A stretch of 62,924 nucleotides of DNA, filler included, from Octopus bimaculoides (GCF_001194135.2; 3 parts of 3 records of this genome joined end to end with filler, not necessarily neighbours in it); one strand, 5' to 3'. Positions 45,223 to 62,924 are shown, numbered from the whole stretch's first letter. A program made the numbers and translations. Notes: generated by a model not told the origin, from the letters alone.

Positions 45223-45720
45223 NNNNNNNNNNNNNNNNNNNNNNNNNNNNNNNNNNNNNNNNNNNNTTAATTAATTAANNNNNNNNNNNNNNNNNNNNNN
45301 NNNNNNNNNNNNNNNNNNNNNNAGAGTTATTAATATTTCTAAGTCTCTCTAAAGGAGACTACGGCAGCGGTACTGGAAATTAATAGTTATCGCCAAGCCA
45401 ACATGGCAGTCCCAAAATTAGGACGAAAGCTGCCGTGAATTAGCTCCAAGAAGCCATCGCCTCTAGCTAGCTATGTGACACACGAAACCTGTGTCCTTTA
45501 TAACCTTCGAACAGGGGAGGTCAGCAGTGTCCCCCTGCTGGTTTGGCATCTGCAGACTAGTTTCAGGGTGTTGCCCCTTGTCAATGCAGAGCAGCCAAGC
45601 CTTAGCCAGGCGGCGCTGCTGACTATCTGATATATATATAAACCCATCTATCCATCCATCCATCCATCCATCCATCTAGCTAGCTAGCTGTCTGTTTGTC
45701 CGTCTCTCAATTTATCTGTC

Positions 45721-45768
<48 letters not shown>

Positions 45769-46229
45769 CATAGCAAAAAAGTTATTGATATTGTATTTCA
45801 TGGTGGGATTGGGTGTCCTTATACCAATAATAAACATGCACACTGGTTCTATTTCACATCATTTATTATCAATAGTCAATTAATCAACCATTTAACCAAT
45901 TATCTAACCGATTGCTTGGTTAATCATTTGGTCTATTAATCAATCAACTAAGTTTCTTAAAGTCCTTTTGTTATCAATCCTATTCTCATCAATGCCATGC
46001 TTTCTTTACTCAGGGTTTGCTCCAGGTCTTTCTGTTTCCTAGTCTATAGATTCAATATTTATAAGAATATGAGTAAGAGTGTATGCCAGAGAAGGAGAGA
46101 GAGAGAGAGAGGGGGGTGAGAGGGAGTGAGAATGAAAGAAAGAGAGAGTGTATATGTGAGTGTGTGCTGGTGTATATGCATTTATGCATGAGTCTGCGTG
46201 GGTGTGCACTTGTGTGACTTGGTGTAGCT

Positions 46230-46362
46230 TCAGGAGTGGCTGTGTGGTTAAGAAGCTTGATTCCCAACCACATGGTTCTGTGTTCAGTCCCACTGTATGG
46301 CACCTTCGGCAAGTGTCCAAAGCCTTGTGAGTGGATTTGGTAGATGGAAACTGAAAGAAGCC

Positions 46363-46397
<35 letters not shown>

Positions 46398-46612
46398 ATG
46401 CATGTATTTATGTGTCAGTGTTTGTCCCCCACCACCATTGCTTGACACTGATGTTAGCGTGTTTACATCCCCGTAGCTTAGTAGTTCAGCAAAAAGAGAC
46501 TGGTAGAGTAAGTAATAGGCTTACAAAGAATAAGTCCTGGGGTCAATTTGTTCGACTAAAGGTGGTGTTCCAGCATGGCCACAGTCCAATGACTGAAACA
46601 AGTAAAAGAATG
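46230..46612 (+). mobile_element. SINE family A
   Basis: caggagtggctgtgtgg...gaaacaagtaaaaga. Confidence 0.85.
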
Positions 46613-47616
46613 TATAAAAGGATGTGTGTGTGTGGGGGGGTCTGTATATATGTATATATGCATGTATGTATGCATATACAAATGCACACACACACACACA
46701 CACACTTGATCACATAGCTCCCAGTTTATTTCACTCACCACGTTTGAGTGGTATGTCTTGTCATAAGCATTAGGATCTTCTGCAACATAGTTTATCATCA
46801 ACCAATACAGTCCTTTGTTGTCTCCTCTGTAAGATGTAACATTTTGAGGTCAGTCTTTGTGTGCGTGTATACATAAGCACAAAAAAATTAGCAAGTAGAT
46901 TGCCACTAGTTTAAAACCTTTTGATACCAACACACCTGAAACTTCCCCCGGTTGCATGAACTGACTTATTGTTTTAAAATAAATAAAAACTTTCCTTCAA
47001 AATGTCCTGTTAATCTTATGTCCCAAACACCAGCTTAATGATGGTTCCAAATTCTGGCACAAGGCCAGCAATTTGGGGTAAGGGAGATAATCGAGTATGT
47101 AGACCCCCCAGTGTTCAAAGCACCCTGTATATATATATATATATATATNNNNNNNNNNNNNNNNNNNNNNNNNNNNNNNNNNNNNNNNNNNNNNNNNNNN
47201 NNNNNNNNNNNNNNNNNNNNNNNNNNNNNNNNNNNNNNNNNNNNNNNNNNNNNNNNNNNNNNNNNNNNTCTTATATATATATATATATAAAGTAACTGGC
47301 ACTCCATTGGTTATGAAATTGAGGGTTCCAGTTGATTCAATTAATGGAACAGCCTGCATCTGAAATTAACATGCAAGTGGCTGAGCACTCCACAGATATG
47401 TGTACTGTTAACATAGTTCTCATGGAAATTCAGCATGACACAGAGTGTGATAAGGCTGGCCTTTTGAAATACAGGTACTATTCATTTTTGCCAGCTGAGT
47501 GAATTGAAGCAATGCGAAATAAAGTGTCTTGCTCAAGGACACAATATGTCACCAGGAATCGAACTCACGACTTTACAATCATAAGCCGAATACCCTAACC
47601 ACATGCCTTCACTTTT

Positions 47617-47652
<36 letters not shown>

Positions 47653-47685
47653 ATATGTAAGTATATATGTATGTATATCTTTCAG

Positions 47686-47847
47686 GTTGGCTGGAGACCA
47701 TTTGCAGATGACAGATATTACAGATATTGGTGGGTAGAGTTTATCAACCTGGTTTATCCCATATTAGTGCTGCTTTTGCTTCTATTCATCTATGCATGGC
47801 AAGTTGGAAACTGTTGGTGGAATTTAAATGCCCGAATTTACATAAAG
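47686..47847 (+). CDS. Internal coding exon (first recovered) of a multi-pass membrane protein, possibly gustatory-receptor-like/7TM ion channel; encodes TM1
   Basis: Acceptor tctttcag|GTT, donor AAG|gtaagt; 162 nt, phase 0/0; VGWRPFADDRYYRYWWVEFINLVYPILVLLLLLFIYAWQVGNCWWNLNARIYIK; splices in frame to the next exon. Confidence 0.9.
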
Positions 47848-48887
47848 GTAAGTTCAGCACTGCTACTGCTGCTACTACTGCTGCTTTCAGGATTGATAAA
47901 ATAAGTATCATTTGAGCATTAGGGTCGATGTAATTGACTTATTCCTTCCCTGAACTTGCTGGTTTTGTGCCAAAATTTGAAACCGATACAATAATTGAAG
48001 CCATTTATGTACATACTTAATGTATGAGCAATGCCTTGTATTTTCATCATATCTACCTTTTCCTGAAGAGAATACACTCATCTGCATCATTTGTTAGGAT
48101 CAGGTACCTTTTATTTTTGTTTCTTTTCACTGATCCCATATTGATGGATACAAGTACATAGATCCATATAAAAAAAATATGAAGCTTCACAATACAGTCA
48201 TGTGAGCACAAGTGATAGTCACTGCATTCTGAGTAATTGCTGTGTCATTCTTTTGCAGACCAAGGAGAATGTTTGACTGATAGCTGTCCTGTGCTATCAC
48301 AGACCAATCAGTGATAAGAATATCATGGTTCAACTGAGCATACCATGTTATTTCAGATCAGTGATGAATGAATCAGTGATAAACAAAGCTACATGTAGTA
48401 TATCAATGTCGTCATGCCTCTGTTAGGGAAACAGAATAGGCAATGGAGATGCATGGTTTTAAACTCCTGTTATACAGGAGAATTGCTTTTTAAGCTTCTT
48501 TGTGATGCATCATTAAAGATGTGCCTGTCAGATGCTTCATTAGTCTGAGAGAAATTTGTTAAGAGTTCGTTAATATTACAATGACAGAATGTCTGTAAAT
48601 CATGTTGCCAAATTTAAATTTTGCCTTTTGACAATGACTCACTCCATTTTCGTATTTTGGTTAAGTAAATTACCCACAATACTACAATCATGATCCAAAC
48701 TTTAAGCACCTTTGGCCACATGCTTTCATGAGATCAGAATAAAGGACTTACAAAAATCTTCCTCCAAATCCTCTAGAACTATATATATCAGAATTCAAAA
48801 TTTTATTGCATTTGTGTATTTATACTTTTTTAATACTTGCTGTTTTTAACCTGTTTTTATTTTCTTTCTTCTTTTGAATTCCAACAG

Positions 48888-49112
48888 AGCCATGAACACA
48901 AACATATGCACACAAGTAGTAGCAATAAATCTGCCTTGACAATGTCTGAAGATACGAATTTGACAACCATCAATAAAAAGGGGAATGTTGAATGCCAGCA
49001 GAATATGCCCACTTATTTAATAACAGATATATTGCACTTGATCATGTTCTGTATGGGAATGGTTTTTTTCCGTTATCATGGTGATGAACAAGTATGCGGT
49101 CTCTTAGAGAAG
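48888..49112 (+). CDS. Coding exon 2 (recovered): loop plus TM2
   Basis: Long pyrimidine tract then ccaacag|AGC, donor AAG|gtatat; 225 nt, phase 0/0; SHEHKHMHTSSSNKSALTMSEDTNLTTINKKGNVECQQNMPTYLITDILHLIMFCMGMVFFRYHGDEQVCGLLEK. Confidence 0.9.
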
Positions 49113-50878
49113 GTATATTCTTTGCATTGTTTTAAAGATATTTATTTCACTTAGCTGATGGCTTCATAGAAACCTAATGCAATGATTAATCATATATACA
49201 TAAAAGATCTTAAAGACTGAATTTAACATCAACGTTTGATATTTAGAAAGATAGCAAGTTGGCAGAATCATTACTGCACTGGAAAAATGCTGAGCAGCAT
49301 TTCTTTTGACTTTATGTTCTGTGTTCAAAAGCCACCAAGGTTGACTTTGCTTTTCATACTTTCAGGGTCGATAAAATAAGTACCAGTTGAACACTGGGGT
49401 CAATGTAATCAATTTACCCCTCCCTAAAACTGTTCACCTTGTGCCAAAATTTGAAATCAATATTTGCTATCGAGAGTTTTAAAACCATGTTTTAAGCGTA
49501 AAAAATTACTTTCCAACAGATTTTGTTTTTGAATTTGTTTCACAAGAATCCAAAATCATGTGTTGAAACTGATATTATTATATTTTAGAAGAGTTAAATT
49601 AGAACCTATAAACACACTCACCAGTTATTATTCACTTTCTTTTAGTTATATTTGCAGAAAATTTCACCATACTTTACCTGTGATTTTGTGGTGATTTTAA
49701 ATTTGGAGAATTTCTAAATTCAATCCATTGAAGTCATAGGAAAAGTGTGTCAAAAATTTCTGGGAATATAACAAAAAACCAGATGTGAACCACAACTGGT
49801 TAGTTTGTTTATAAGCTTTAATTTGGTTGTCCCACATTGTAACAATAGTTTTTTTTTAATATAATTACTAGCAAATATTCAAGGCAGTGAACCTGAAAAA
49901 TTGTTAGCATGTCAAGCAAAATGCTTAGTGGCATTTTATCCATCTTTACATTCTGAGTTCAAATTCCACTGAGGTTGACTTTGCCTTTCATCCTTTTGGG
50001 GGTCAATAAAATAAATACCAGTTGATCACTGGGGTTGATGTAATTGACTTACCCCTTCCTCTGAAATTAGTGACCTTGTGCCAAAATTTGAAATCAATAT
50101 AATTACTATGCTTTTGCATATTTTTAAAAACCATTATAACTATTTCAATAATTTATACTTAATAGTAGAACTCAGAGTAGCAATAAATGATATTGGGTTA
50201 AAAACCATTTGGATAGCAGAAATCAAAGGCCGGGCATCATATTTACAGAAGATATGTGGTATAAGTTCTATAGGCAACCTTCGACTATTTCTATTTAAAG
50301 GAATTTTTAAATTAACATTCACACTCTGTTATTTATAGCTTTATCTACTTCAAGTTCCATTGTTAAAAATGAATTATTTCTTGTTTCTCAAAGTTTCTAA
50401 GTTCTTATGATGTATCTCAATAATTGTTTATTTTAAGATTTAATCCAATGAGTCGCCAGAAACCACACTATATTGGCAGGCTTCATTAAATCATTTAGTT
50501 AAATTTCATTGTTCTGACTTCAGATTCTGCAAAGATTAATTTTGCTTGTCCCTCAGTTGACTATATCTTCTCTTATAATTCTTGGCCTTATGTCTTATTC
50601 CACCAAAAATTAACGATGATTTTTCTTTTGAATTTAAAACTGAGAAGATTAAAGATTTCAACTAACTTAACCATTTTGATACTAACCTTACTGAAACCAC
50701 CTATGGTTATATGATACAAATTTCCTATTTTAAAGTTATCTGAATTAAAACCTTCTAATCAAAATTTTATGTTAATTTATGTTACAAACACCATTTTAAT
50801 AATGGCAAAATTACTTTACTGAATTCTTTGTTATTTAAAAGACATAACTGAAACAGAGATAATGTATTTCAATAGAAA

Positions 50879-50904
50879 TCTATATATATAAAAATGAGAA
50901 TGTG

Positions 50905-50947
<43 letters not shown>

Positions 50948-52239
50948 GTGAATCCCTAAAACTCGAGAACTACGCAACCAATTTCATTCAAATTTTACAC
51001 ATGCCTTACTTANNNNNNNNNNNNNNNNNNNNNNNNNNNNNNNNNNNNNNNNNNNNNNNNNNNNNNNNNNNNNNNNNNNNNNNNNNNNNNNNNNNNNNNN
51101 NNNNNNNNNNNNNNNNNNNNNNNNNNNNNNNNNNNNNNNNNNNNNNNNNNNNNNNNNNNNNNNNNNNNNNNNNNNNNNNNNNNNNNNNNNNNNNNNNNNN
51201 NNNNNNNNNNNNNNNNNNNNNNNNNNNNNNNNNNNNNNNNNNNNNNNNNNNNNNNNNNNNNNNNNNNNNNNNNNNNNNNNNNNNNNNNNNNNNNNNNNNN
51301 NNNNNNNNNNNNNNNNNNNNNNNNNNNNNNNNNNNNNNNNNNNNNNNNNNNNNNNNNNNNNNNNNNNNNNNNNNNNNNNNNNNNNNNNNNNNNNNNNNNN
51401 NNNNNNNNNNNNNNNNNNNNNNNNNNNNNNNNNNNNNNNNNNNNNNNNNNNNNNNNNNNNNNNNNNNNNNNNNNNNNNNNNNNNNNNNNNNNNNNNNNNN
51501 NNNNNNNNNNNNNNNNNNNNNNNNNNNNNNNNNNNNNNNNNNNNNNNNNNNNNNNNNNNNNNNNNNNNNNNNNNNNNNNNNNNNNNNNNNNNNNNNNNNN
51601 NNNNNNNNNNNNNNNNNNNNNNNNNNNNNNNNNNNNNNNNNNNNNNNNNNNNNNNNNNNNNNNNNNNNNNNNNNNNNNNNNNNNNNNNNNNNNNNNNNNN
51701 NNNNNNNNNNNNNNNNNNNNNNNNNNNNNNNNNNNNNNNNNNNNNNNNNNNNNNNNNNNNNNNNNNNNNNNNNNNNNNNNNNNNNNNNNNNNNNNNNNNN
51801 NNNNNNNNNNNNNNNNNNNNNNNNNNNNNNNNNNNNNNNNNNNNNNNNNNNNNNNNNNNNNNNNNNNNNNNNNNNNNNNNNATTGTGATTTCTGCAATGT
51901 GGTGCATAAATTGTCAAGTAAATGAGACGCATCTTTGCCTCCACTGATTCACTTGCAAAGTGTTGAGTAAAATTATTTCGTTGCAGACCTCCTTTGGGTC
52001 TTTTTATTATCACTACGACACACATAGTCCCCAGTTGGTAACATTGATTTCAAGGCCCTCCTAGATGAGAGACTGGCATTCCACTTAATGTCTATGTTCC
52101 ATGCTGGCATGGATTGGAGAGTTATTAATGTAGAAATATGGTATCGTAGCTACTAACAGTTGAGGGTTGCGTAGTCTAGACGGCGTTTTTAGATTTCATT
52201 ATTCTCTTTAACCCGGGCAAAGCCGGGTATTTCTGCTAG
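50879..52239 (+). mobile_element. Non-autonomous Helitron termini spanning an assembly gap
   Basis: 5' A|TCTATATATATAAAAATGAG then (GTCT)n; 3' hairpin ACCCGG-gcaaag-CCGGGT (52211-52228) then CTAG|T. An ~870-nt gap lies between, so continuity is unproven. Confidence 0.65.
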
Positions 52240-52279
52240 TATAGTAATAAAAAGGTTAAAAGCCATGTGTTTTATCTTT

Positions 52280-52667
52280 TATCTTTTACTTGTTTCAGTC
52301 ATTTCACTGCAGCCATACTGGAGCACTGCCTTGAAGAATGTTTAGTTGAAGGAACTGACCCCAGGGTTTATTTTTTCTTTTAAGCCTGGCACTTATTCTA
52401 TCAGTCACTTTTACCAAACTGCTAAGTTATGGGGATGTAAACAAACCAGCACCAGTTATCAGGCAGTAGTGGAGGAACAAACACACATGCATACACACAC
52501 ACACATTTATATGACGGGCTTCTTTTAGTTTCCATCTACTATATCCACTCTCAAGGCTTTGGTTGGCCTGAGGTTATAGTAGAAGACATTTTCCCGATGT
52601 GCCACAAAGTGGGACTGAACTCAGAACCATGTGGTTGGGGAGCAAGCTTCTTACCACACAGCCACCA
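52280..52667 (-). mobile_element. SINE family A, intronic
   Basis: Full-length reverse copy. Confidence 0.85.
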
Positions 52668-53630
52668 TAAGGTGAAAATCTGTCATCGATATAGTAATAA
52701 GTTCTGAAGCAAAACTATGTTGCTTTATTTATAAAGAGGAAAGATCAGTATCCCCAAAATGGGTGATAGTTGGCCTTGATGTGGAAACATAAAGACATCT
52801 TGACTACTAGCAGAATTATTGGCATTTTGAATTTTGAATAAATCATGAAATTAACTGTTATTTTTAAAAATGCTATTATTATAACTATCCATAGATGCTT
52901 TACAAACTACAGTACAGAGATCTATTTTTAATAGCACAAGGCATGGATCCTGCAATAAGTTTACTAAATCAAGTGAAGAAGTGGTAAGGAGAATTAAAGG
53001 TTTTGAAGTGTAGGTTTCAGTTACACATTGTTATTGAGTGCTTAAGGCAGTGAGCTGGCAGAATTGTTAGTGCTCTGAGCAAAATGCTTGGTGGCATTGT
53101 GTCTGCCTTTGCATTCTGTGTTCAAGTTCCACTGTGGTCGACTTTGCCTTTTATCTTTTTGGGGTCAATAAAATAAACATCAGTTGAACACTGGAGTTGA
53201 TAAAATATATACCAGATGAACACTGGGGCTGATGTAAAGGACTTAACCCCCCACCACCACATGCTGAAGTAATTGACTTATTCCAAACTTGCTGGCCTTG
53301 TGCCAAAATCTGAAACCAATATTATGAAAAGATAACCTCATTCTCCAATAATTCATGTAAATGTGTAAATTTGCACCTCCATTCAACAATATTTGAATGG
53401 AAAAAAATAGGGAAGAAAAATGAATCTGAAATACTTATGAATGAAAAAAATTAGGAAATAGGTAAGGAGAAATAATGTATTTGCACCGTATCCATGAGGT
53501 TTACAAAATTTGGTTGTTAATAAGAATTAAATTAAATTATAATGTATACATTTCCTAAGCCTTGAAATATTTAGATCTAAAAGCAGTGAATTAGCAAGTT
53601 CTTTTGGGAATTAGACAATATGTGTAGTGG

Positions 53631-53694
53631 TGTGTAGATCCAACCCCTTTATTCAGAGATAAAATTCTCAGAATAAAGGGGTTGGATCTACACA
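53631..53694. repeat. Perfect 24-bp inverted repeat (64-nt hairpin), intronic
   Basis: TGTGTAGATCCAACCCCTTTATTC (53631-54) and GAATAAAGGGGTTGGATCTACACA (53671-94). Confidence 0.9.
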
Positions 53695-54319
53695 ATTATG
53701 CCTTTCGATCAATAGGGTTGATAAAATAAAGTACCAGTCAAGTACTGGAATTGAACTAATTGAGTGATGTTAGTGTTTCACTGGTTCATTCAAGTAAGAG
53801 ACTGTGGTTGAGAAACCTGTAAAATTCTCTTAGAGTTATTCATATTCTAAGTGTAGATGAGAATGTCAACTTCAAAGACCACAGTTCTTCTGTGACGAGC
53901 AGCTACTCCAATATTATTAGTCTTGGCAGATGCAGTGATACACAATGCCACACAAATCCTAAAGTTAATGGGAAATGGGTGTAGTTCAGCCTCCTGCAAG
54001 TTCTAATGGATTGAAGATTTTCAACCAGTTCATAGCAATAAACAACGAATAGATAAATCTCTTCTGGAAAGGTACCAACCAATCTGAAGAAATATTTTTG
54101 CATAATCTGGCACCTATTTCCAATAGATAGCTAGGTGAATTGCAGAGCATATAATTAAATATTTTGTCTAAATAAAGAACCAAAATACCAGTAAAGTACA
54201 GATCTATGGGTGGGTCATTCAATATCACATCTACTTTTACATTTTGATTCTCCTATTCAAAAGTATATCAAATAATTTTGAATAGATCAGGCCTTCTTCC
54301 ATTTTGTCATTGTTTACCA

Positions 54320-54745
54320 GGCATAGCTGTGTAGTTAAGCAGATTGCTTTGTAACCATGTGATTTGGGGTTCAGTCCCACAGTACAGCACCTTGAACGAG
54401 TGTCTTCTACTATAAATCAAGGCTGAAAAATGCCTTGTGAGTGAATGTGATTGGCGGAGACTGTGTAGAAGTCCTTTATGTGTGTGTGTGTGTGTGTGTC
54501 TGCATGCATGTATGTATATATCTATGTGTTATGTGTGTGTGTCTGTGTGTTTGTTCCTCACCACTGCTTGACAACCAGTGTTGGTTTGTTCATGTCCCTG
54601 TAACTTAACTAAAAAGCAAAAGAGACTAAAAGAATAAGTACCAGATTTTCAAAAGAAATAAGTTCTGGGGGAAATTTGTTCAACAAAAATCTTCAGCAAA
54701 GTACCCCAGCATGGCTACAGTTCAAAGACTGAAACTTGTAAAAAA
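54320..54745 (+). mobile_element. SINE family A, intronic and diverged
   Basis: Head and tail recognisable. Confidence 0.75.
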
Positions 54746-54997
54746 ACAAATGACAAAGAATATTACTCCATTATTTTTTTCTTTTGTTCTCTACCTGTTT
54801 CTCTTGTCAATGGATAAATTATTCAAAATGTTGATATTTCTTTCTTTCTCTCATTGTACAATGAACACTTGTAAACTTCGTTACTTCTTTTTTTCTCTTT
54901 TTTCCTTCCTCACAGTCCATCTTCAGTATTATCTATAGCTATAACATAGTGAATGTTATCTGAAATATTCTATCATTTTCTTTCTCTCATTTACCAG

Positions 54998-55065
54998 GTG
55001 TTTCTTGAGATAGAATCTCTACGAAATCGGAATGTTTCAAACAATATCATGGTAAGAAAATTCAG
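54998..55065 (+). CDS. Coding exon 3 (recovered): loop between TM2 and TM3
   Basis: Acceptor ctctcatttaccag|GTG, donor TTCAG|gtaagt; 68 nt, phase 0/2; VFLEIESLRNRNVSNNIMVRKF+ag; phase matches the next exon. Confidence 0.85.
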
Positions 55066-55224
55066 GTAAGTGTTGTATTTTTATCTTTCATAATTCTCTT
55101 TTCATGGATCAACTCTCTAATCCATCCAAACCAAACTACTCAGTAGCCAAATTAGTGTGTTGCTATGTGGTTTATTAAGCTACTAGAAATAGTTCACAAA
55201 TCCCTCTCAAAGCATACTCTACAG

Positions 55225-55558
55225 CAGGAGTTCTCAACTTGGGTCCATATGGACCCTTGAGGTCCATATAAGATTTTGCGGGGTCCACTGATGCAATATA
55301 GTAGATTGGAGGTTCACAGTAAATTTTCATGGGCCATGAAAAAACTGTATTTTAGACTAGTAAAGTTTATGTGCAATAAATTGGTTATACATTCAAAATA
55401 CACAAACTATTTCAACAATTTTTATACAAGTCCTAATCATATTTTTAATTATAAAAATACAATAGGATTTTTTAAACATCGAATGGCTATGGGAGTCCAC
55501 CCAAGTAAAATAGGAATTAAAAGGGTCCATAGATAATAAAAATGGTTGAGAACCCCTG
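55225..55558. mobile_element. hAT-type MITE, intronic
   Basis: TIRs CAGGAGTTCTCAAC / GTTGAGAACCCCTG (13/14); degenerate 8-bp TSD ctctacag / atttacaa. Confidence 0.75.
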
Positions 55559-56319
55559 ATTTACAAGCTTAAATAAGAAAAACACATATTAGATATGTAG
55601 TAACAGTATATCATCACCCACATCATCACTCCTAAAATCATGAGAGGGTCATGGGTTAAAATAACTTTGATTATAGGTCAACTCAGTCAGAGTTTATCAG
55701 GGATTAAATATCAACAAGAAGAAAAATATTCATGACTGCATGTTAGCAAGCTTCAGAATTTCCATTTTATATTTAAAAAGAATTGGTATGTCAGTGTTTG
55801 GAATCTGCTGCATAATACCCATCCCTCTTTGCCATTCTAACTATGGAACTGTTTCCTCATCTGCAATAATTATATAATGATTTTACTGATGTATCCTGAT
55901 GTCTTCCAAGCAAAATAATTTACGAGATGCACACAGGTTAGATCAGATGTGGGGCTGTGCCAATGCAGTACAATCACTGCATCCACCACTTGTCCGTATT
56001 TGCTGGGGCCACCCTGGGCAACCCTCCAAGCAGTGTCCCCAAGCCCACCCAATTGTTTTTGCGCAGTAATATTTCATGTAGTTGTTGGTTATGGCTGATC
56101 AGTTAAAGAATTTAGTGAATGCCCCTAAACTCTATACAGAGGCAGGATGCTCATGCAGGGGTTAACAGTGAGTACCCAGTAGGCAGTCAATGCAACTCTG
56201 AGGTAGGGGTCTATGAGGTAGAAGTGGTGTCCAGCAGTAGCAGCAGCAATGGCAATGCTAGCAGCAACAACAACAGCAGCAGTACTAACAACATACACTG
56301 AAATATGTTGGAGCAATGA

Positions 56320-56640
56320 TGGACCCTTTTAAGTTGCAACTAAATAACTTCAAATCTTCTATTAGGATCCCAAAGAGGTGCAACATTATGGCACTGGTCA
56401 ATACATGTCCTATTTAAAAGAAAAGGAAATGCCATGCAAAATTAAATGGAAGCACCTGAAACATTCTGAGCCATACCTCAATAGAAGAAGACAATGCAAA
56501 CTTTGCATGGCCAAAAGAGCAAGGATCCTTCAAAAAATTCTCTTGGTTCAGGTGCCTCTTAAATTCAAAAAGTGAGGATTTAGTTGATGCCTTCAGGATA
56601 GAAAATTTGTGTTAGAAAAGTGGATTTCCTTGCTGCAATA
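56320..56640 (+). mobile_element. Decayed Penelope-like GIY-YIG C-terminal fragment
   Basis: YMSYLKEKEMPCKIKWKHLKHSEPYLNRRRQCKLCMAKRARIL fits the 'YIW.LK...IKW.IL...Y....C.LC..EK..I' pattern of PLE endonuclease C-termini. Confidence 0.6.
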
Positions 56641-56821
56641 GCAGATGTGAAACCAATGGTAACTTTCTGCCCAGCCATAACCAATAATGTAATGTGTGTG
56701 TGTATTCATATTTATGTGTGTATATATATATATATATATAGGTGAGAAAGTTGGTATGTGAAAGCACGTGGTTGGATGTATAAAAGATAATAAGAGTGAA
56801 AAAACTACAGAAGACTTGTGT

Positions 56822-56994
56822 TATATAGTTAAAGTATATATTTAAATTATGTTAGAAAAATGTTATAAAATCTTTTTGGTATATAAACATTGTATTTTGA
56901 GAAATAACCGGTTTCGTGTTGTCTTTTCAAATTTCTCTACTTCATTGTAACGTGTTCGCTCTGACATAATTTAAATATATACTTTAACTATATA
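56822..56994. repeat. Perfect 31-bp inverted repeat enclosing a hammerhead motif (probable Penelope inverted pLTR)
   Basis: 56822-56852 is the exact reverse complement of 56964-56994; the right arm runs into a gap. Confidence 0.75.
56899..56937 (-). ncRNA. Minimal type I hammerhead motif with U3-A8 core variant
   Basis: Minus strand GAGAAAT-TTGAAAA-GACAACAC-GAAA-CCGG-TT-ATTTCTC: perfect 7-bp stem I, palindromic ACCGGT stem III, stem II reduced to one G-C pair. Confidence 0.5.
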
Positions 56995-58051
56995 NNNNNN
57001 NNNNNNNNNNNNNNNNNNNNNNNNNNNNNNNNNNNNNNNNNNNNNNNNNNNNNNNNNNNNNNNNNNNNNNNNNNNNNNNNNNNNNNNNNNNNNNNNNNNN
57101 NNNNNNNNNNNNNNNNNNNNNNNNNNNNNNNNNNNNNNNNNNNNNNNNNNNNNNNNNNNNNNNNNNNNNNNNNNNNNNNNNNNNNNNNNNNNNNNNNNNN
57201 NNNNNNNNNNNNNNNNNNNNNNNNNNNNNNNNNNNNNNNNNNNNNNNNNNNNNNNNNNNNNNNNNNNNNNNNNNNNNNNNNNNNNNNNNNNNNNNNNNNN
57301 NNNNNNNNNNNNNNNNNNNNNNNNNNNNNNNNNNNNNNNNNNNNNNNNNNNNNNNNNNNNNNNNNNNNNNNNNNNNNNNNNNNNNNNNNNNNNNNNNNNN
57401 NNNNNNNNNNNNNNNNNNNGTCACAAAGTCATCAGTGGTGCCCCAGCAGTCAGCCAGACAACAGGAAATGTAATGTAATGTAATGTAATATCATCATCAT
57501 CATCATCGTTTAATGTCCGCTTTCCATGCTAGCATGGGCTGGACAATTTGACTGAGGGCTGGTGAACTGGATGGCTACACCAGGCTCCAATCTGATTTGG
57601 CAGAGTTTCTACAGCTGGATGCCCTTCCTAACGCCAACCACTCCGAGAGTGTAGTGGGTGCTTTTGTGTGCCACCGGCACGAAGGCCAGTCAGGTGGTAC
57701 TGGCAATGGCCATGCTCAAAATTGTGTATTTTTCATGCCACCTGTACAGGAGCCAGTCCAGCGGCACTGGCAACGATCTCGCTCGAATGTCTTTGCACGT
57801 GCCACCGGCACAAGTGTCAGGAAGGTGACGCTGAGCACAGGTGCCATCCCATTCCCATTTCTGAGTATACTTACCTTGTGTTCTGTAATATTTTTTTTAT
57901 TGTGTTTCAATTTTGAATTTAAAAAATGGTTGTTTACATGGTGGTAGCAGGGCTGCCCATTCAGCAAAAATAAGCATTATTCTTTCATATTCAAAATATT
58001 CATCTTTTAAACATCAACTTCTTTTTATTTTTATTCATTTTTTTTTTTTAG

Positions 58052-58159
58052 GATATTCATGGGAGCTGGAATCACATGGGTGTTAATGACAGTTGGCCTG
58101 CAAATTCTCTATTTTTGGATTTATCGTTCACATATATTCATAACCACTGAGAGTTTAAG
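58052..58159 (+). CDS. Coding exon 4 (recovered): TM3
   Basis: Poly-T acceptor ttttttag|G, donor AAG|gtaagt; 108 nt, phase 2/2; (R)IFMGAGITWVLMTVGLQILYFWIYRSHIFITTESL+ag. Confidence 0.9.
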
Positions 58160-59214
58160 GTAAGTAAGCATCTAAGGAAAACAATCTTGTAATGTTGAAA
58201 TATTTGACATACCTGCCATGATGTTATAAGAGCTAGTTGTTATTCTTCCCATTGTTGTTTAGCCTTGGGTGATTACCTGTCATATTGATGTATGGCCAAC
58301 AGCATTAAAGCTCTGGCCATCCCATCAGTGTTCAAGATTATATTACTCAACATGAGTCATAAAGGTGTGGTTTATAAAGATATATGACTGGGATTTCCAA
58401 CAGGTCCTTAATACAAAAGGTTTATGCAGAGGAAGTAAAATCATTCTATGTTATTGCTTGGTTGTGACCTATTTATTCAAATCCTATTTTGGTGACTTTT
58501 ATTTAACATTTGAATGTAGTCATTCCCATGTATAACTTTAGCTTCACGAATACTTTAACCGTGTGACACCTATGTATGACAATGAGAATCAAAATTAACT
58601 AAAAATAACTACAAATATCTTGGATAAAGTGTAAGAATCAGGCATATAGATTCGTTAGTTTATTATGCATGAACTAAAGGTAGCTGAAATGAATCTCATA
58701 CTAAATACTAGTCTTGTAGCCCCTCCTCAGTCACCGCCAGCACACCTATCTCTCCTCCTTTCCTTATCCTTGTTGTGTCCCATCCAACTTTCCTTCTCCC
58801 AGTCACCACACTAATTCCTATGTCTAGTCCTTTCTCCCCAGAATATTGTCTGTCCGGAACCCCCTCCCTGCTAATGTCTTTCAAGTAGGTATTAACTTGC
58901 AACAGTTTAAATAGAATTTTAATGGCATTGATCTCACTTGTCTTGGGAGGTGTATGACTAAATAATAAATAAATAACCATTTGGAAACGTTTCCATATAT
59001 TTTTGACTTCAAATGTGATTACTGCTATCTCTGCCTTTCACTCATTCAGAGTAGGCTAATCATTTGTTGCCCAAAGAAGTAACAGTTCCCTGTACACTGT
59101 CACCACTTCCTTACACTAGCAATAACATTTGTTCTAAAGCTACCTACAGAGGTAATTAGATTGATCACCAAGGTATGACAAATTATCAGGAAGGTGCAGG
59201 TGTGGTTATAGGTA

Positions 59215-59488
59215 CAGGTGTGGCTGTGTCGTTAAGAAGTTAGCTTTCTAACCACATGGTTTTGGGTATTCCCACTGAGCAGCCCCTTCTGAAAATGTCT
59301 TCAGCTTTAGCATCAAGTCAACCAATGCTTTGTGAGTGGATTTGGTAGATGGAAACTGAAAAAAGTCCATCATGTATACATACATACATACATACTGTGT
59401 GGATGTTCATTGTGTATTTATAGATGTGTGTGTGTATGTATGTGTGTGTGTGTGCATGTCTTTGTATGTCTTTGTAAGTGTGTGTCTT

Positions 59489-59523
<35 letters not shown>

Positions 59524-59850
59524 ATGGTGAGGTGCATGTCTTTGTAAGTATGTGTCTTTGTGTGTGTGTGTGTGTGTATGTGCATGTGTGCACGTCTTCG
59601 TATGTGTGTCTTTGTGTGTGTTTTTGTGTAAGTGATGGTGCATATATGTGCGTATATTTATATTTATGTTTGTCTCCTACTACTGTTTGACAAAGGTTGC
59701 TGGTTTGTTTATATCCCTGTAACCTGGTACTTTGACAAGAGTTGAATGGAATAGGTACCAGACTTAGAAATAAGTACTAGTCTCAATTTGTTCAGTTAAA
59801 CCTTTCAAGGTTCCAGCATGGCCACAATTCTAATAACTGAAACCAGTGAA
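59215..59850 (+). mobile_element. SINE family A with expanded internal (GT)-rich tract, intronic
   Basis: Head at 59215 and tail at ~59850, separated by ~280 nt of microsatellite. Confidence 0.7.
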
Positions 59851-61125
59851 AGGTAACTCTGACCTTGTTAAGAATATTCTCATGCATAACTTTAATGACT
59901 CTCAAACCATGCATTCATATACTTTGTTTACCAAATACTCTCCAGACTGCTGATTTTGGCATCCTTTCAAATGCTGTTCTCTAGATCACAGACATTTCAA
60001 ACTAAAACGGTTTATTCTTATCTAAGAACTTTTGTTATGCTACAAATTATACAAAACATATTACTATAAATATGTATAAATATGTATAACAAATATATTA
60101 TACAAAACATTACTACAAATATTTTCCCATCTTCTGACACAAAATGAAATTGCACTTTAATATAGCAAATCCTGCCAAGCTAATTCTTCTGTTTCTACAG
60201 GTTAATAATATCAGAACTACACACTAATGAATTAAACTTGTAAATTTATTAATAATTCAACTGCTAATACTTGTGAGTTAATCAACTTAGAAGATGAAGT
60301 AAGGTGATTGAAGGTGAAAGAAAACTATTGAGAATTAAGTGCCATGGCCACATGGATATTTCAGTATACTGGCAATGGGATGTGAACCCTGAACCAACTG
60401 GTTGATAGATAAATGCCTATGTGTAAATATATGGCAGTAGTTTTGATTAAATAAATCATTATCAAAGAATAAATAAATAAATGATAGCTACAAGAAACAA
60501 ATGTTCTGAAACACCAACTAGTTTGATCTATAATAAACTGCAGCCAAATATTCAAATTACACCTATTGTCTTAAAAAAGAAGACCGTTTATATCATAGAG
60601 CCAGTTACATTACCAACAACAACATCATCGTCCTTATCCCCATCGTCATCATCATCATCATCATTTAACATTTGCTTGCCACGCTGCTGTGGGTTGGACA
60701 GTTTGATAGGAGCAGACTAGCTAGGGAGCTGCCCAAGTTCCAAATGTGTGTTTCAGCTTAGTTTCTATGGCTGGATGCTCCTTCTTAATGCCAACCACTT
60801 CAGAGAGTGTACTAGGTGCCTTCTACGTGGTTCTGGCACAGGTACTTTTATGTGACACTGGCACGAGCACTTTTACATGGCACCAGCATGAATGCTTTTT
60901 ACATGACATCAGTGCTCACGAGCCCTCAAGAGTAGGACCTCTCAGTTAAGAGAAGGATGCAGAGAACATACCTGTAAGCAGAGACAGCTACTATGCCAGG
61001 AGGGAAAAAAATGTAGTGATGAAGTTGGAATTCCACCTTTTTATCATCAGGCTGTCTTGAGACTAAACAACAGCTGCAATAATAAGAAATTCAATTTTTT
61101 TTCATTTTGTAATTTTCATATACAG

Positions 61126-61303
61126 TTCAGCTACTATTTGGAGCCTTGTAGTCTTGGAAGTTATTGGCGTTTTTATGATCAACACAGTGAGCTTAGCAGC
61201 TGTCTGCAACTATGTGATACAGTGTGAAGCTATCATACTCTTTGTAAGGGGAATATCTCTTCGATTTCTTGATTCTGGACAGGATCTGCCGAAAGGCATG
61301 AAG
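61126..61303 (+). CDS. Coding exon 5 (recovered): TM4 and following helix
   Basis: Acceptor ttttcatatacag|T, donor AAG|gtagat; 178 nt, phase 2/0; (S)SATIWSLVVLEVIGVFMINTVSLAAVCNYVIQCEAIILFVRGISLRFLDSGQDLPKGMK. The five exons total 741 nt, 247 codons with no stop. Confidence 0.88.
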
Positions 61304-61436
61304 GTAGATATAACTTATACTATTATTATTATTAATATATTTTACTTCTTAGAGATCTCGGTCTTACTTGCTCTGGTTGATTCTGTGAGAGTGGACAGCA
61401 CCCTTTTGTCAGAAGTCCCACGGAGTCTATTATTAT

Positions 61437-62125
61437 ATGAAAACTCACACCTTATTTTGTTGGGTATGGTGGAAAGTGTCAGCTGTCCACAGCCAGCAGA
61501 CTAAGGTGACACTTGTTTACTGGTCATGCTTCAAGAACCCTGTAAAGGAGTCTTGCAGTTCCAAGCAATACTGATTTTTGTAGGTGTTCTACCTTCACAC
61601 TTGCACCGGTCTTTTTCAGCCATGCTGGTAGTTGAGTGCTGATGCTTCCAAGTACACCAAATACTATTGGTATCACATCTACTCCCCTCATTGACCACAA
61701 CCTTCATAATTTTCACTTTTAATCATCATAGTTGTTTATTTTTTCTTCCTGTTTCACATTGATCCTATTGTTACTGGGACATGCTATGTCGATTATCATA
61801 CATGTTCTTTTTTATTCACCACAACAATGTCTGGTTTCCTATGTCTGGTCAGGTGATTGCACAGGATCGTTACATCCCACAGGATTTTGCAATTCTCATT
61901 TTTGGTGACTCCTTCTGCTCTTTGTAGGCCATGATTTCCACAGAGCTCCCAATGGATCATTCTTTCCACATTGTCATGGCATCATATATATTTGCGTTGT
62001 GCCAATTTCAGGCATTCACTAACAATGTGTTGTACTGTTTCACCCCTCTCACCACACATTCAGCATTTGTCGCTATTGGTAGTGCTGCCAATTTTGCACT
62101 TCATATAATTGATTGTGGCATTAAT
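61437..62125 (-). mobile_element. R4/Dong-type non-LTR retrotransposon 3' fragment (CCHC + restriction-like endonuclease), intronic
   Basis: Minus strand SDKC*MCGERGETVQHIVSEC, HDNV, KILWD, RKPDIVVVNK..MIIDIACP, VIPIVFGVLGS...LQKSVLLGTARLLYRVLEA*; the 3' end runs into a (TAA)n tract. Confidence 0.85.
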
Positions 62126-62924
62126 CACGTTTGGATAGTGCTTTTTACGTGCCACCGGTATGGGAACTAATCAGGTGGACCTGGCATTGACCACGTTTGG
62201 ATGGTGCTTTTTATGTATATATATATATATATATATATATAAATATATATATATAAGCCTGGTGTTGCCATCCGGTTTCACCAGTCCTCAGTCAAATCGT
62301 CCAACCCATGCTAGCATGGAAAGCGGACGTTAAACGATGATGATGATGATGATGATATATGTAGAAAGGGAGGAAGAGAGACAGAGAGATAGAAAAGCTA
62401 GAAGAAAGGAAAAGGAAAGGAAATCAACTAGGGAACCATTTAACACAAGTTCAGTTTAATACATTCATATGACAGGAAGAGTAGGAGGACTACCGAGGTG
62501 TGGCTGTAGACACAGAAGTGAGGCAGGTAGATATTGGACATCCGGTTGATTCTGTGAGAGTGAACAGCACCCTTTTGTCAGAAGTCTCACAGAGTCTATT
62601 ATTATTATGTTTTTTTTTCTTCTTTCTTCAAATTTTTTCCCATTTCTCGCCGAGTGTTTTCCGTACACCTAGGACAGAGAAACGTTGTATGCATTCCCAA
62701 TTTACACACGCAAATTCATAGGTAAAACATGTATTTAAGAAAAAAAGAAGAAAAAAAATCATGAATGGATGTTGTTTTCACAGCGATAATGCTCTTCTTA
62801 GTACATGAGTCGTTCCAATTAGCACGATTTTTTGCACCTCCTGTAGAGATGGTAAGCCTGGTATTATTTTCAAATAGATTTCAGTACCTTTTTTTATCAT
62901 TCCTAGAGATCCTACAATCACTGG

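What the first reader, a model, noticed from the sequence alone, without database searches (positions are those of the whole stretch)
47686..61303. Uncharacterised multi-pass membrane gene with gustatory-receptor-like / 7TM ion-channel architecture
Seen: five exons with canonical splice sites and consistent phases (0,0,0,2,2,0) give 247 uninterrupted codons with four hydrophobic helices. The TM1-TM2 loop has two N-glycosylation sequons (NKS, NLT) and one Cys at each end (GNCWW, VECQQ), implying a cytoplasmic N-terminus and an extracellular first loop. TM4 continues into NYVIQCEAIILFVRGISLRF, a long amphipathic helix. Known: insect Or/Gr-type 7TM ion channels have an intracellular N-terminus and a long cytoplasmic helical extension after TM4, unlike GPCRs. 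Inference: the motifs GWRPF, YP, LH, EQ..L.EKVF and NY..QCE recall, from memory and unverified, an uncharacterised invertebrate membrane family sometimes labelled gustatory-receptor-like. A cephalopod member would be a candidate chemosensory or ligand-gated channel distinct from the Cys-loop-derived chemotactile receptors. The start exon is upstream or in a gap, and TM5-7 lie beyond the window.
Basis: partly seen in the sequence, partly recalled or inferred. Interest (0 to 1): 0.8.

Follow-up and report, generated by a model that had tools for sequence, protein, structure and literature searches.

The report
Octopus GrlHz gene, exons 4–8

Summary
It matches residues 116–362 of RefSeq XP_014777607.1 (Octopus bimaculoides LOC106874396, 519 aa, "uncharacterized") at 100% identity. 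Both assembly gaps lie in introns and hide no coding sequence. The O. sinensis orthologue is collinear, and none of 43 homologues has extra residues at those junctions. The full gene has 12 coding exons over about 68 kb; the window carries exons 4–8, which encode TM1–TM4.

The family is GrlHz (Gustatory receptor-like Holozoa; fly CG3831), defined by Benton & Himmel, eLife 2023. This exact protein is in their GrlHz sequence set and trees. My own tests agree:
- A profile of the family against fly CG3831 gives 99.95% probability.
- An AlphaFold2 model (pTM 0.76) has seven TM helices, long TM4–6 helices and a split TM7a/7b.
- The 20 best Foldseek PDB matches are all insect Gr, Or or Orco structures; the next hit falls to E 0.24.

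It is not a canonical Gr: no Pfam hit, and no TYhhhhhQF motif.

The architecture call is supported. A chemosensory role was not tested. The gene looks single-copy and deeply conserved, and fly GrlHz is expressed broadly outside neurons, which argues against that role. Verdict: already known, low interest.

The parts
45323..47685 (+). 3' part of the intron before coding exon 4. It contains microsatellites, SINE-like repeats and a 120-N gap at 47149-47268.
   Evidence: tblastn of the full protein finds no part of residues 1-115 here. In locus L001 the previous exon lies about 19 kb upstream. Repeats.
47686..47847 (+). Coding exon 4 of 12 (residues 116-169): GWRPF motif, TM1, and conserved Cys158 at the start of extracellular loop 1.
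   Evidence: Boundaries are ...tttcag|GTT and AAG|gtaagt, phase 0/0. 100% match to XP_014777607.1. AF2 helix 130-156.
48888..49112 (+). Coding exon 5 (residues 170-244): variable loop 1 with sequons N182 and N193, conserved Cys205, TM2, and the start of the EQ..L.EK motif.
   Evidence: Boundaries are ...aacag|AGC and AAG|gtatat, phase 0/0. 100% match. Loop 179-199 has pLDDT below 50; helix 209-232. Conservation.
49113..54997 (+). Intron 5, containing the assembly gap 51013-51881 and SINE-like repeat copies.
   Evidence: The junction 244|245 is continuous in RefSeq, in the O. sinensis orthologue and in 43 homologues, with no inserted residues. Repeats.
54998..55065 (+). Coding exon 6 (residues 245 to two-thirds of codon 267): VFL motif and the cytoplasmic TM2-TM3 linker helix.
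   Evidence: Boundaries are ...accag|GTG and CAG|gtaagt, phase 0 in and 2 out. V245 36/43 and F246 39/43 conserved. Aligns to the family consensus EkVFLQ...lIr.lR without gaps.
55066..58051 (+). Intron 6, containing the assembly gap 56995-57419.
   Evidence: The junction 266/268 is continuous in the orthologue and the homologues.
58052..58159 (+). Coding exon 7 (end of codon 267 to two-thirds of codon 303): TM3.
   Evidence: Boundaries are ...tttttag|GAT and AAG|gtaagt, phase 2/2. AF2 helix 255-290. W276 is at least 90% conserved.
61126..61303 (+). Coding exon 8 (end of codon 303 to residue 362): TM4 with the NY..QCE motif, its long cytoplasmic extension, and the first residues of the TM5 helix.
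   Evidence: Boundaries are ...atacag|TTC and AAG|gtagat, phase 2 in and 0 out. Single helix 304-353 with pLDDT above 90. Motif conservation.
61304..62924 (+). 5' part of intron 8. It carries repeat copies and minus-strand ORF fragments that resemble a retroelement tail.
   Evidence: The next coding exon (residues 363-396) lies about 9.5 kb further on in L001, beyond a 3.1-kb N run. Repeats.

Best explanation
Window 47686-61303 (+) carries coding exons 4-8 of the 12-exon, roughly 68-kb gene LOC106874396 of Octopus bimaculoides. This is the octopus orthologue of GrlHz (Gustatory receptor-like Holozoa; Drosophila CG3831). GrlHz is a lineage of the seven-transmembrane ion channel (7TMIC) superfamily that also contains insect odorant and gustatory receptors.

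Shown:
- The five exons encode TM1 to TM4: TM1, an extracellular loop 1 with a conserved cysteine pair and glycosylation sequons, TM2, a cytoplasmic linker, TM3, and TM4 with its cytoplasmic extension.
- The rest of the protein (an N-terminal S0-like helix, TM5, TM6 and the split TM7a/7b) is encoded outside the piece.
- The 7TMIC fold is supported by an AlphaFold2 model and a Foldseek search.

Inferred by analogy with Orco, MhOr5, BmGr9 and Gr43a, at roughly even odds: four subunits assemble around a central pore lined by TM7b, where the family keeps a glutamine (Q504) at the extracellular end. The cytoplasmic parts of TM4-6 plus TM7a would form the anchor bundle, and the protein would conduct cations when gated by a still unknown stimulus.

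The gene appears to be single-copy and is deeply conserved, and the fly orthologue is expressed in non-neuronal tissues. A general cellular or physiological role is therefore more likely than a role as an environmental chemoreceptor.
For: - Gene model: reproduced exactly. 100% identical to XP_014777607.1 residues 116-362. The full exon map on GCA_001194135.2 CM046605.1 shows 12 coding exons.
- Orthologue: O. sinensis has a collinear 519-aa protein, 97% identical.
- Family: homologues occur in bivalve, chiton, annelid, hemichordate, starfish and scorpion. BLASTP against Dmel CG3831 gives E 1e-12 over 417 columns. hhalign of the 43-sequence profile against CG3831 gives probability 99.95%, E 1.6e-37, 379 columns.
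- Publication: the protein is named by accession in the GrlHz curated database, alignment and trees (files 27-34) and in GrlHz-Dmel-CG3831.fasta (file 168) of PMC9998090.
- Fold: AF2 mean pLDDT 77 and pTM 0.76, with TM core blocks mostly above 90. There are seven TM helices, helices of 45-50 residues for TM4, TM5 and TM6, and TM7a 459-471 followed by TM7b 485-504. Foldseek against the PDB: ranks 1-20 are all Gr64a, Gr43a, BmGr9, MhOr5, AaegOR10, AgamOR28 and Orco (E 2.8e-5 to 3e-3, probability 1.00, target-normalised TM-score 0.47-0.69). Rank 21 drops to E 0.24 and TM-score below 0.2.
- Topology: two sequons and a cysteine pair conserved in 40/43 sequences lie in the TM1-TM2 loop. The N-terminal segment and the TM2-TM3 linker are rich in K and R.
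- Channel mechanism of the structural relatives: tetramer, S7b pore and Q/F gate (PMC11100771).
- Expression and conservation of GrlHz: PMC9998090. Placement in Class-A eukaryotic 7TMICs: bioRxiv 10.1101/2023.08.30.555482.
Against: - No GrlHz protein has been shown to form a tetramer or conduct ions. The authors of the family themselves say a completely different activity cannot be excluded.
- Sequence-level links to Gr/Or are absent or faint. No Pfam family passes its cut-off. Only 1 of 43 members touches 7tm_6 (E 0.0085) and 1 of 43 touches DUF3537 (E 0.1). The family profile finds no Gr/Or chain in the PDB by sequence.
- The Gr pore motif TYhhhhhQF is not present; only Q504 (30/43) resembles it.
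- Foldseek RMSDs are large (5-9 A) and identity is 8-15%.
- I could not check octopus RNA-seq, so transcription of these junctions in O. bimaculoides rests on the RefSeq model and on the conserved collinear orthologue.
Confidence: 0.9

Rival explanations
1. It is an octopus chemosensory receptor: a ligand-gated channel on sensory cells of the suckers, olfactory organ or skin.
For: It shares the fold of insect Gr/Or chemoreceptor channels. Extracellular loop 1 is variable and carries glycosylation sequons.
Against: Only this one O. bimaculoides gene appeared in my search and in the passages I read from the published GrlHz trees. The family has conserved orthologues from Capsaspora to lancelets, which is the opposite of the lineage-specific expansions typical of chemoreceptor families. 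Fly GrlHz is expressed in heart, ovary, testis, fat body and nephrocytes, and only sparsely and non-neuronally in the proboscis. Octopus also has separate canonical GRL genes, such as LOC106874590, which group with C. elegans LITE-1-type GRLs. No octopus expression data were available here.
Confidence: 0.07
2. It has the 7TMIC fold but is not an ion channel. For example, it could be a scaffold, a lipid or solute handler, or an organellar membrane protein, with the resemblance to Gr/Or being structural only.
For: No function is known for any GrlHz. The family's authors keep this option open. The Gr pore motif is missing apart from one glutamine. The PHTF branch of the superfamily also has no shown channel activity.
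Against: Every 7TMIC with a solved structure is a tetrameric cation channel. The anchor-domain helices and the split TM7 are retained with high model confidence. Q504 at the outer end of TM7b is conserved in 30/43 sequences.
Confidence: 0.35
3. The exons are a chance assembly of open frames, or a pseudogene broken by the assembly gaps.
For: The piece is AT-rich and repeat-rich and contains several unrelated ORFs of 100 aa or more. Two N runs fall inside the finding's span.
Against: 247 of 247 residues are identical to a RefSeq protein, in one ungapped stretch. Motifs are conserved across phyla in all five exons. The O. sinensis orthologue is collinear. The gaps lie in introns and no residue is missing.
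Confidence: 0.01
4. It is a G-protein-coupled receptor, with seven TM helices and an extracellular N-terminus.
For: The full protein has seven hydrophobic segments.
Against: No GPCR appears among the 50 listed Foldseek PDB matches, while 20 Gr/Or/Orco chains match. There are no GPCR Pfam hits. The sequons and the conserved cysteine pair sit in the TM1-TM2 loop, which implies an intracellular N-terminus.
Confidence: 0.01

Closest known systems
GrlHz (Gustatory receptor-like Holozoa), type member Drosophila melanogaster CG3831 / Q9W1W8 (Benton & Himmel, eLife 2023)
   Same: It is the same family, and this protein is listed in the family's published data set. The alignment runs end to end (hhalign 99.95%). 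The shared motifs are CK..L.PY, GW/L.P, LH, EQL..L.E.VFL, NY..QCE, P..QA.R and LDS.LLF...AKLF.IP. Both have seven TM helices and the 7TMIC fold.
   Different: Identity to the fly protein is only about 21%. The octopus protein has a longer, disordered N-terminus (residues 1-87) and a longer glycosylated extracellular loop 1. It has no WD40/NOL10-like N-terminal extension, unlike some hymenopteran database entries.
Insect gustatory receptors (Gr43a, BmGr9, Gr64a; PDB 8jm9, 8vc1, 8jme)
   Same: These are the best structural matches (E 2.8e-5 to 8.7e-4, target-normalised TM-score 0.47 to 0.67). Shared features are an intracellular N-terminus, an S0-like helix, long S4-S6 helices, a split S7a/S7b, and a glutamine near the outer end of S7b.
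   Different: Identity is 8-12%. There is no Pfam 7tm_7 or Trehalose_recp hit and no TYhhhhhQF motif. Grs are large, fast-evolving families expressed in taste neurons. GrlHz looks single-copy and, in flies, is broadly non-neuronal.
Insect odorant receptors and Orco (MhOr5 7lic, AaegOR10 8v00, AgamOR28 8v3c, Orco 6c70)
   Same: Same fold. Target-normalised TM-scores reach 0.69 for the odorant receptors MhOr5 (7lic_A) and AaegOR10 (8v00_D). Orco itself (6c70_A) ranks 20th at E 3e-3 and TM-score 0.56.
   Different: There is no significant sequence similarity. One of 43 family members gives a sub-threshold 7tm_6 hit at E 0.0085. ORs are insect-specific, whereas GrlHz predates animals.
Canonical non-insect GRLs (for example octopus LOC106874590, C. 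elegans LITE-1/GUR, Nematostella GRL1)
   Same: Same superfamily, and also present in octopus.
   Different: They form a separate cluster in the published similarity network and tree. GrlHz forms its own cluster, linked only weakly to the Or/Gr/GRL clusters. Canonical GRLs are detectable by Gr sequence profiles; GrlHz is not.
PHTF proteins (Class-B eukaryotic 7TMICs)
   Same: A conserved, functionally uncharacterised 7TMIC-fold family that is also present in octopus.
   Different: PHTF is placed in Class B and GrlHz in Class A. PHTF has a long intracellular insertion and an N-terminal PHTF domain. The octopus protein shows no Pfam PHTF hit.

Membership tests
GrlHz (Gustatory receptor-like Holozoa) | Significant full-length sequence similarity to D. 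melanogaster CG3831 | tested here: met
   BLASTP E 1e-12 over 417 columns. hhalign of the 43-sequence profile against CG3831 gives probability 99.95%, E 1.6e-37, 379 columns.
GrlHz (Gustatory receptor-like Holozoa) | Placement in the published GrlHz clade | tested here: met
   [quoted passage not shown] I did not build a tree of my own.
GrlHz (Gustatory receptor-like Holozoa) | Orthologues across Holozoa, low copy number | tested here: met
   Homologues occur in molluscs, an annelid, a hemichordate, an echinoderm and an arachnid. Only this one O. bimaculoides gene and one O. sinensis gene appear in the published-tree passages I read. I did not run a dedicated paralogue search of the octopus genome.
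7TMIC superfamily (Or/Gr fold) | Seven TM helices with an intracellular N-terminus | tested here: met
   Seven hydropathy peaks and seven AF2 TM helices. The N-in orientation is inferred from the sequons and the conserved cysteine pair in the TM1-TM2 loop, from K/R-rich cytoplasmic segments, and from the structural match to Gr/Or. No experimental topology exists.
7TMIC superfamily (Or/Gr fold) | Long TM4-TM6 helices reaching into the cytoplasm (anchor domain) and TM7 split into 7a and 7b | tested here: met
   Helices 304-353, 357-401 and 408-452 (45-50 residues each), then 459-471 (7a) and 485-504 (7b), mostly with pLDDT above 90.
7TMIC superfamily (Or/Gr fold) | Tertiary-structure similarity to solved Or/Gr/Orco structures and not to other seven-TM folds | tested here: met
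   Foldseek PDB ranks 1-20 are all Gr/Or/Orco (E<=3e-3, probability 1.00). Rank 21 has E 0.24. No GPCR, adiponectin-receptor or channelrhodopsin chain appears among the 50 listed matches.
7TMIC superfamily (Or/Gr fold) | Homo- or heterotetramer with a central cation pore lined by TM7b | not testable with these tools
   No multimer prediction or experiment is available here. This is known only for Orco, MhOr5, BmGr9, Gr43a and Gr64a.
Insect gustatory receptor family (Pfam 7tm_7 / Trehalose_recp) | Match to the family profile above Pfam's gathering score | tested here: not met
   P0001 has no Pfam family at E<=10. No 7tm_7 hit occurs in any of the 43 members.
Insect gustatory receptor family (Pfam 7tm_7 / Trehalose_recp) | TYhhhhhQF motif in TM7b | tested here: not met
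   TM7b reads ...FACFLFPILFQTG. Only Q504 is conserved (30/43). The residue after it is T, not F, and no T-Y pair lies seven residues upstream.
Insect odorant receptor family (Pfam 7tm_6) | Match to the family profile above Pfam's gathering score | tested here: not met
   Only 1 of 43 members gives a sub-threshold hit (E 0.0085). The octopus protein gives none.
G-protein-coupled receptors | GPCR fold with an extracellular N-terminus | tested here: not met
   No GPCR appears among the 50 listed Foldseek PDB matches. There is no GPCR Pfam hit. The topology indicators point to N-in.

The most novel reading that the evidence does not exclude
Octopus GrlHz has been co-opted as a sensory or otherwise ligand-gated cation channel, for instance in sucker or olfactory epithelium. 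Its variable, glycosylated, disulfide-stapled extracellular loop 1 would contribute to ligand recognition. This would give the first functional assignment for the whole GrlHz family. Nothing here excludes it, because no octopus expression or electrophysiology data could be consulted.
Probability: 0.06. Interest if true: 0.7.

Novelty: already known. Interest (0 to 1): 0.2.

Why it matters
As a discovery it matters little. The gene is annotated in RefSeq, and this exact protein was already placed in the GrlHz family of the 7TMIC superfamily in 2023. Two things remain useful. First, it shows that an unaided read of raw sequence can recover a correct five-exon model and the right remote family. 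Second, no GrlHz protein has yet been characterised functionally. It is still open what a deeply conserved relative of insect chemoreceptor channels, apparently single-copy in octopus, does in non-sensory tissues, and whether it is a channel at all. The octopus gene adds no special leverage on that question beyond what fly or cell-culture models already offer.

Tried and rejected
- Pfam scans of the exon products, the 247-aa product and five full-length family members found nothing meaningful. Scanning all 43 members gave only isolated sub-threshold hits.
- phmmer of the 247 aa, and hmmsearch of the family profile, against PDB sequences gave only chance matches: SDR16 at E 1, and a viral polymerase-cofactor coiled coil at E 0.1. 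The link to Gr/Or is visible by structure only.
- The search for homologous proteins with the exon 4+5 product (129 aa) returned nothing, although the 100% identical protein is in that collection. The word index missed it. The exhaustive HMMER search found it. A reader relying alone would have wrongly concluded that no homologues exist.
- From memory I considered PHTF, CALHM, pannexin/LRRC8/innexin, TMC/OSCA and GPCRs. None was supported once homologues and the fold search were in hand.
- I checked whether the exons overlap repeats. They do not; the SINE-like copy nearest exon 4 starts at 47884.
- I checked whether the newer chromosome-level assembly fills the gaps. It does not.
- Rfam and tRNA scans of the piece found nothing.
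- Pfam on the minus-strand and other non-gene ORFs found nothing.
- Literature searches for a functional study of CG3831/GrlHz, or of a cephalopod Gr-like receptor, found none.

Full report
**Layout of the piece.** The usable piece is 45323-62924. It is AT-rich and has three N runs: 47149-47268, 51013-51881 and 56995-57419. It is full of GT/AC microsatellites and dispersed SINE-like repeats. Open frames of about 100 aa are common on both strands, so ORF length alone proves nothing here.

**The observation.**
- 47686-47847
- 48888-49112
- 54998-55065
- 58052-58159
- 61126-61303

All are on the + strand. Each follows a pyrimidine-rich tract ending in AG and is followed by GT; three of the donors are the consensus AAG|gtaagt or CAG|gtaagt. 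The phases are 0,0,0,2,2,0 and the sum is 741 nt, or 247 codons without a stop. None of the exons overlaps a repeat.

**Is it real?** Pfam and PDB sequence searches of the product were empty. The word-indexed protein search with exons 4+5 found nothing. The exhaustive HMMER search of 1.84 billion representatives did find it. Two proteins match all 247 residues at 100% in one stretch, and 95 more score E<=1e-3.
- The 519-aa match is RefSeq XP_014777607.1, "uncharacterized protein LOC106874396 [Octopus bimaculoides]". O. sinensis LOC115212387 is in the same 90% cluster.
- The 755-aa match is an older UniProt model of the same gene, padded with low-complexity and repeat-derived segments.
- More distant homologues come from a freshwater mussel, a chiton, an annelid, an acorn worm, a starfish and scorpions. 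All are unnamed, except for one automatic "Odorant receptor" label.

**The gaps.** Both N runs inside the finding fall in introns, between exons 5 and 6 and between exons 6 and 7.
- The O. sinensis protein is also 519 aa and aligns without any indel.
- In a 43-sequence alignment of full-length homologues, no sequence has a residue inserted at junctions 244/245 or 266/268.
- The profile alignment to the fly protein runs through both junctions without gaps.

No coding sequence is hidden in the gaps. The chromosome-level assembly (GCA_001194135.2, CM046605.1:25212055-25285623, locus L001) contains the piece at 100% identity but keeps the same N runs. On L001 the gene has 12 coding exons over about 67.6 kb. 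The window holds exons 4-8.

**What the family is.** The library holds Benton & Himmel, eLife 2023 (PMC9998090). They name Drosophila CG3831 "GrlHolozoa (GrlHz)". It is a protein with the Or/Gr (7TMIC) fold but almost no sequence similarity to Grs. It has homologues across Holozoa, including lancelets and Capsaspora. In flies it is broadly expressed in non-neuronal tissues (heart, ovary, testis, fat body, nephrocytes), and its function is unknown.

Their supplementary GrlHz files name Octopus_bimaculoides_XP_014777607.1 / LOC106874396 explicitly. The same files also name the starfish and scorpion proteins my search had found. [quoted passage not shown] A follow-up preprint places GrlHz in "Class-A" eukaryotic 7TMICs with insect Ors/Grs, animal Grls and plant DUF3537.

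**Independent tests.** I took the CG3831 isoform A sequence from that supplement.
- Sequence: BLASTP against the octopus protein gives E 1e-12 over 417 columns at 21% identity. The 43-sequence profile against CG3831 gives hhalign probability 99.95%, E 1.6e-37, 379 aligned columns.
- Model: AlphaFold2 on the alignment gave mean pLDDT 77 and pTM 0.76. The N-terminal 87 residues and loop 179-199 are disordered, and most TM blocks are above 90. The helices are 93-116 (S0-like), 130-156, 209-232, 255-290, 304-353, 357-401, 408-452, 459-471 and 485-504. That is seven TM helices, three very long helices for TM4-6, and a split TM7a/7b.
- Fold search: in Foldseek against the PDB, ranks 1-20 are exclusively Gr64a, BmGr9, Gr43a, AaegOR10, AgamOR28, MhOr5 and Orco (E 2.8e-5 to 3e-3, probability 1.00, target-normalised TM-score 0.47-0.69). 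Rank 21 has E 0.24 and TM-score below 0.2. No GPCR is listed.

The protein passes that test.

- Hydropathy finds the four helices in the window and three more downstream.
- N182-K-S and N193-L-T lie in the low-confidence TM1-TM2 loop. Cys158 and Cys205, at its two ends, are each kept in 40 of 43 homologues. This suggests a conserved disulfide on the extracellular or lumenal side.
- Together with K/R-rich N-terminal and TM2-TM3 segments, this fits the N-in topology of 7TMICs.
- All recalled motifs are real family signatures.
- The "long amphipathic helix" after TM4 is the cytoplasmic part of one 50-residue helix. It corresponds to the anchor-domain extension seen in Orco and the Grs.

**Where it is not a Gr or Or.**
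- No Pfam family passes its threshold for any of 43 members. One member touches 7tm_6 at E 0.0085 and one touches DUF3537 at E 0.1. Both are 7TMIC families, but the hits are too weak to count.
- The family profile finds no Gr/Or chain in the PDB by sequence.
- The Gr pore motif TYhhhhhQF is absent. In BmGr9 its T, Y, Q and F each have an assigned role in the pore and gate. TM7b here ends ...FPILFQTG, and only Q504 is conserved (30/43).

It is a member of GrlHz and of the 7TMIC superfamily, not of the Gr or Or families proper.

**Mechanism.** Shown: the gene structure, family membership, predicted fold and predicted topology. Inferred: by analogy with every solved 7TMIC, the protein would form a tetramer. 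TM7b would line a central pore, the TM4-6 extensions plus TM7a would form the cytoplasmic anchor, and a stimulus sensed in the TM1-6 bundle would move TM7b. I put roughly even odds on GrlHz being a channel at all, because nobody has tested it and the Gr gate motif is largely missing.

The chemosensory suggestion is weaker, at about 0.07:
- Only this one O. bimaculoides gene appeared in my search and in the published-tree passages I read.
- The family is conserved across animals and their unicellular relatives.
- The fly orthologue is broadly non-neuronal.
- Octopus has separate canonical GRL genes.

**Verdict.** The finding is already known. Interest is low, apart from the still-open function of the GrlHz family.

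Noticed in passing
window 47884-47992, 49284-49466, 49918-50103, 53081-53325: Four or more copies of one dispersed repeat of about 110-240 nt (core GTCGATAAAATAAGTACCAGTTGAACACTGGGGTCAATGTAATCGACTTA...TTGTGCCAAAATTTGAAA), 60-84% alike, all in introns of the gene. It looks like a SINE-type element. One copy starts 37 nt after exon 4's donor.
   Followed up: partly
window 46231-46317, 54318-54404, 59215-59301 (direct); 52585-52653 (inverted): A second repeat family whose head resembles a tRNA (…GGCTGTGTGGTTAAGAAGC…GGTTC.GTGTTCAGTCCCACTG…). It is followed by a shared segment, 46317-46365 / 59322-59370, that is 90% alike. ARAGORN calls no tRNA, so these are probably tRNA-derived SINE heads.
   Followed up: partly
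window 61524-61969 (-) and 62778-62921 (-); also 61372-61436 and 62541-62605 (94% alike): Minus-strand ORF fragments (…VIPIVFGVLGSISTQLPAWLKKTG…LQKSVLLGTARLLYRVLE; …ILWDVTILCNHLTRHRKPDIVVVNKKEH) resemble, from memory, the C-terminal tail of non-LTR retrotransposon ORF2 proteins common in marine invertebrates. Pfam finds nothing. They lie in intron 8.
   Followed up: partly
window 57483-57566, 60642-60706, 62277-62360 (inverted); L001 58547-58890: Another interspersed repeat begins with (TCA)n followed by GTTTAATGTCCGCTTTCCATGCTAGCATGGG. A 344-nt copy, 90% alike, sits in the opposite orientation in a downstream intron of the same gene. The long ORFs at 57552-57944 and 60725-60946 lie inside these copies and are probably not genes.
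   Followed up: partly
window 46457-46558 (+): The older UniProt model of this gene (A0A0L8GW10, 755 aa) includes a segment, …ACLHPRSLVVQQKETGR, translated from repeat sequence in the intron before exon 4. It also carries long poly-Asp/Glu inserts elsewhere. RefSeq and the O. sinensis orthologue lack them, so they look like gene-prediction artefacts.
   Followed up: partly
L001 68609-68740 (coding exon 11, outside the window): O. sinensis isoform X2 (475 aa) skips exactly this 132-nt, phase-0/0 exon (residues 432-475). That removes the end of TM6 and all of TM7a. It is either a non-functional splice form or an annotation artefact.
   Followed up: no
related sequences: GrlHz-Dmel-CG3831.fasta in PMC9998090: Hymenopteran GrlHz entries are named "nucleolar protein 10". 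They carry a roughly 700-aa NOL10-like WD40 N-terminus fused to the 7TM part, and the paper reads this as a WD40 domain of some GrlHz proteins. A nucleolar protein fused to a seven-TM protein could instead be a merged gene model of two neighbouring genes. This was not checked.
   Followed up: no
L001 1-1880, 25940-32144, 49747-52857, 60864-63194 and others: The chromosome-level O. bimaculoides assembly still has eleven N runs in this 73.6-kb locus. They include the ones that bound and interrupt the window's piece. Intron sizes for this gene are therefore only estimates.
   Followed up: yes
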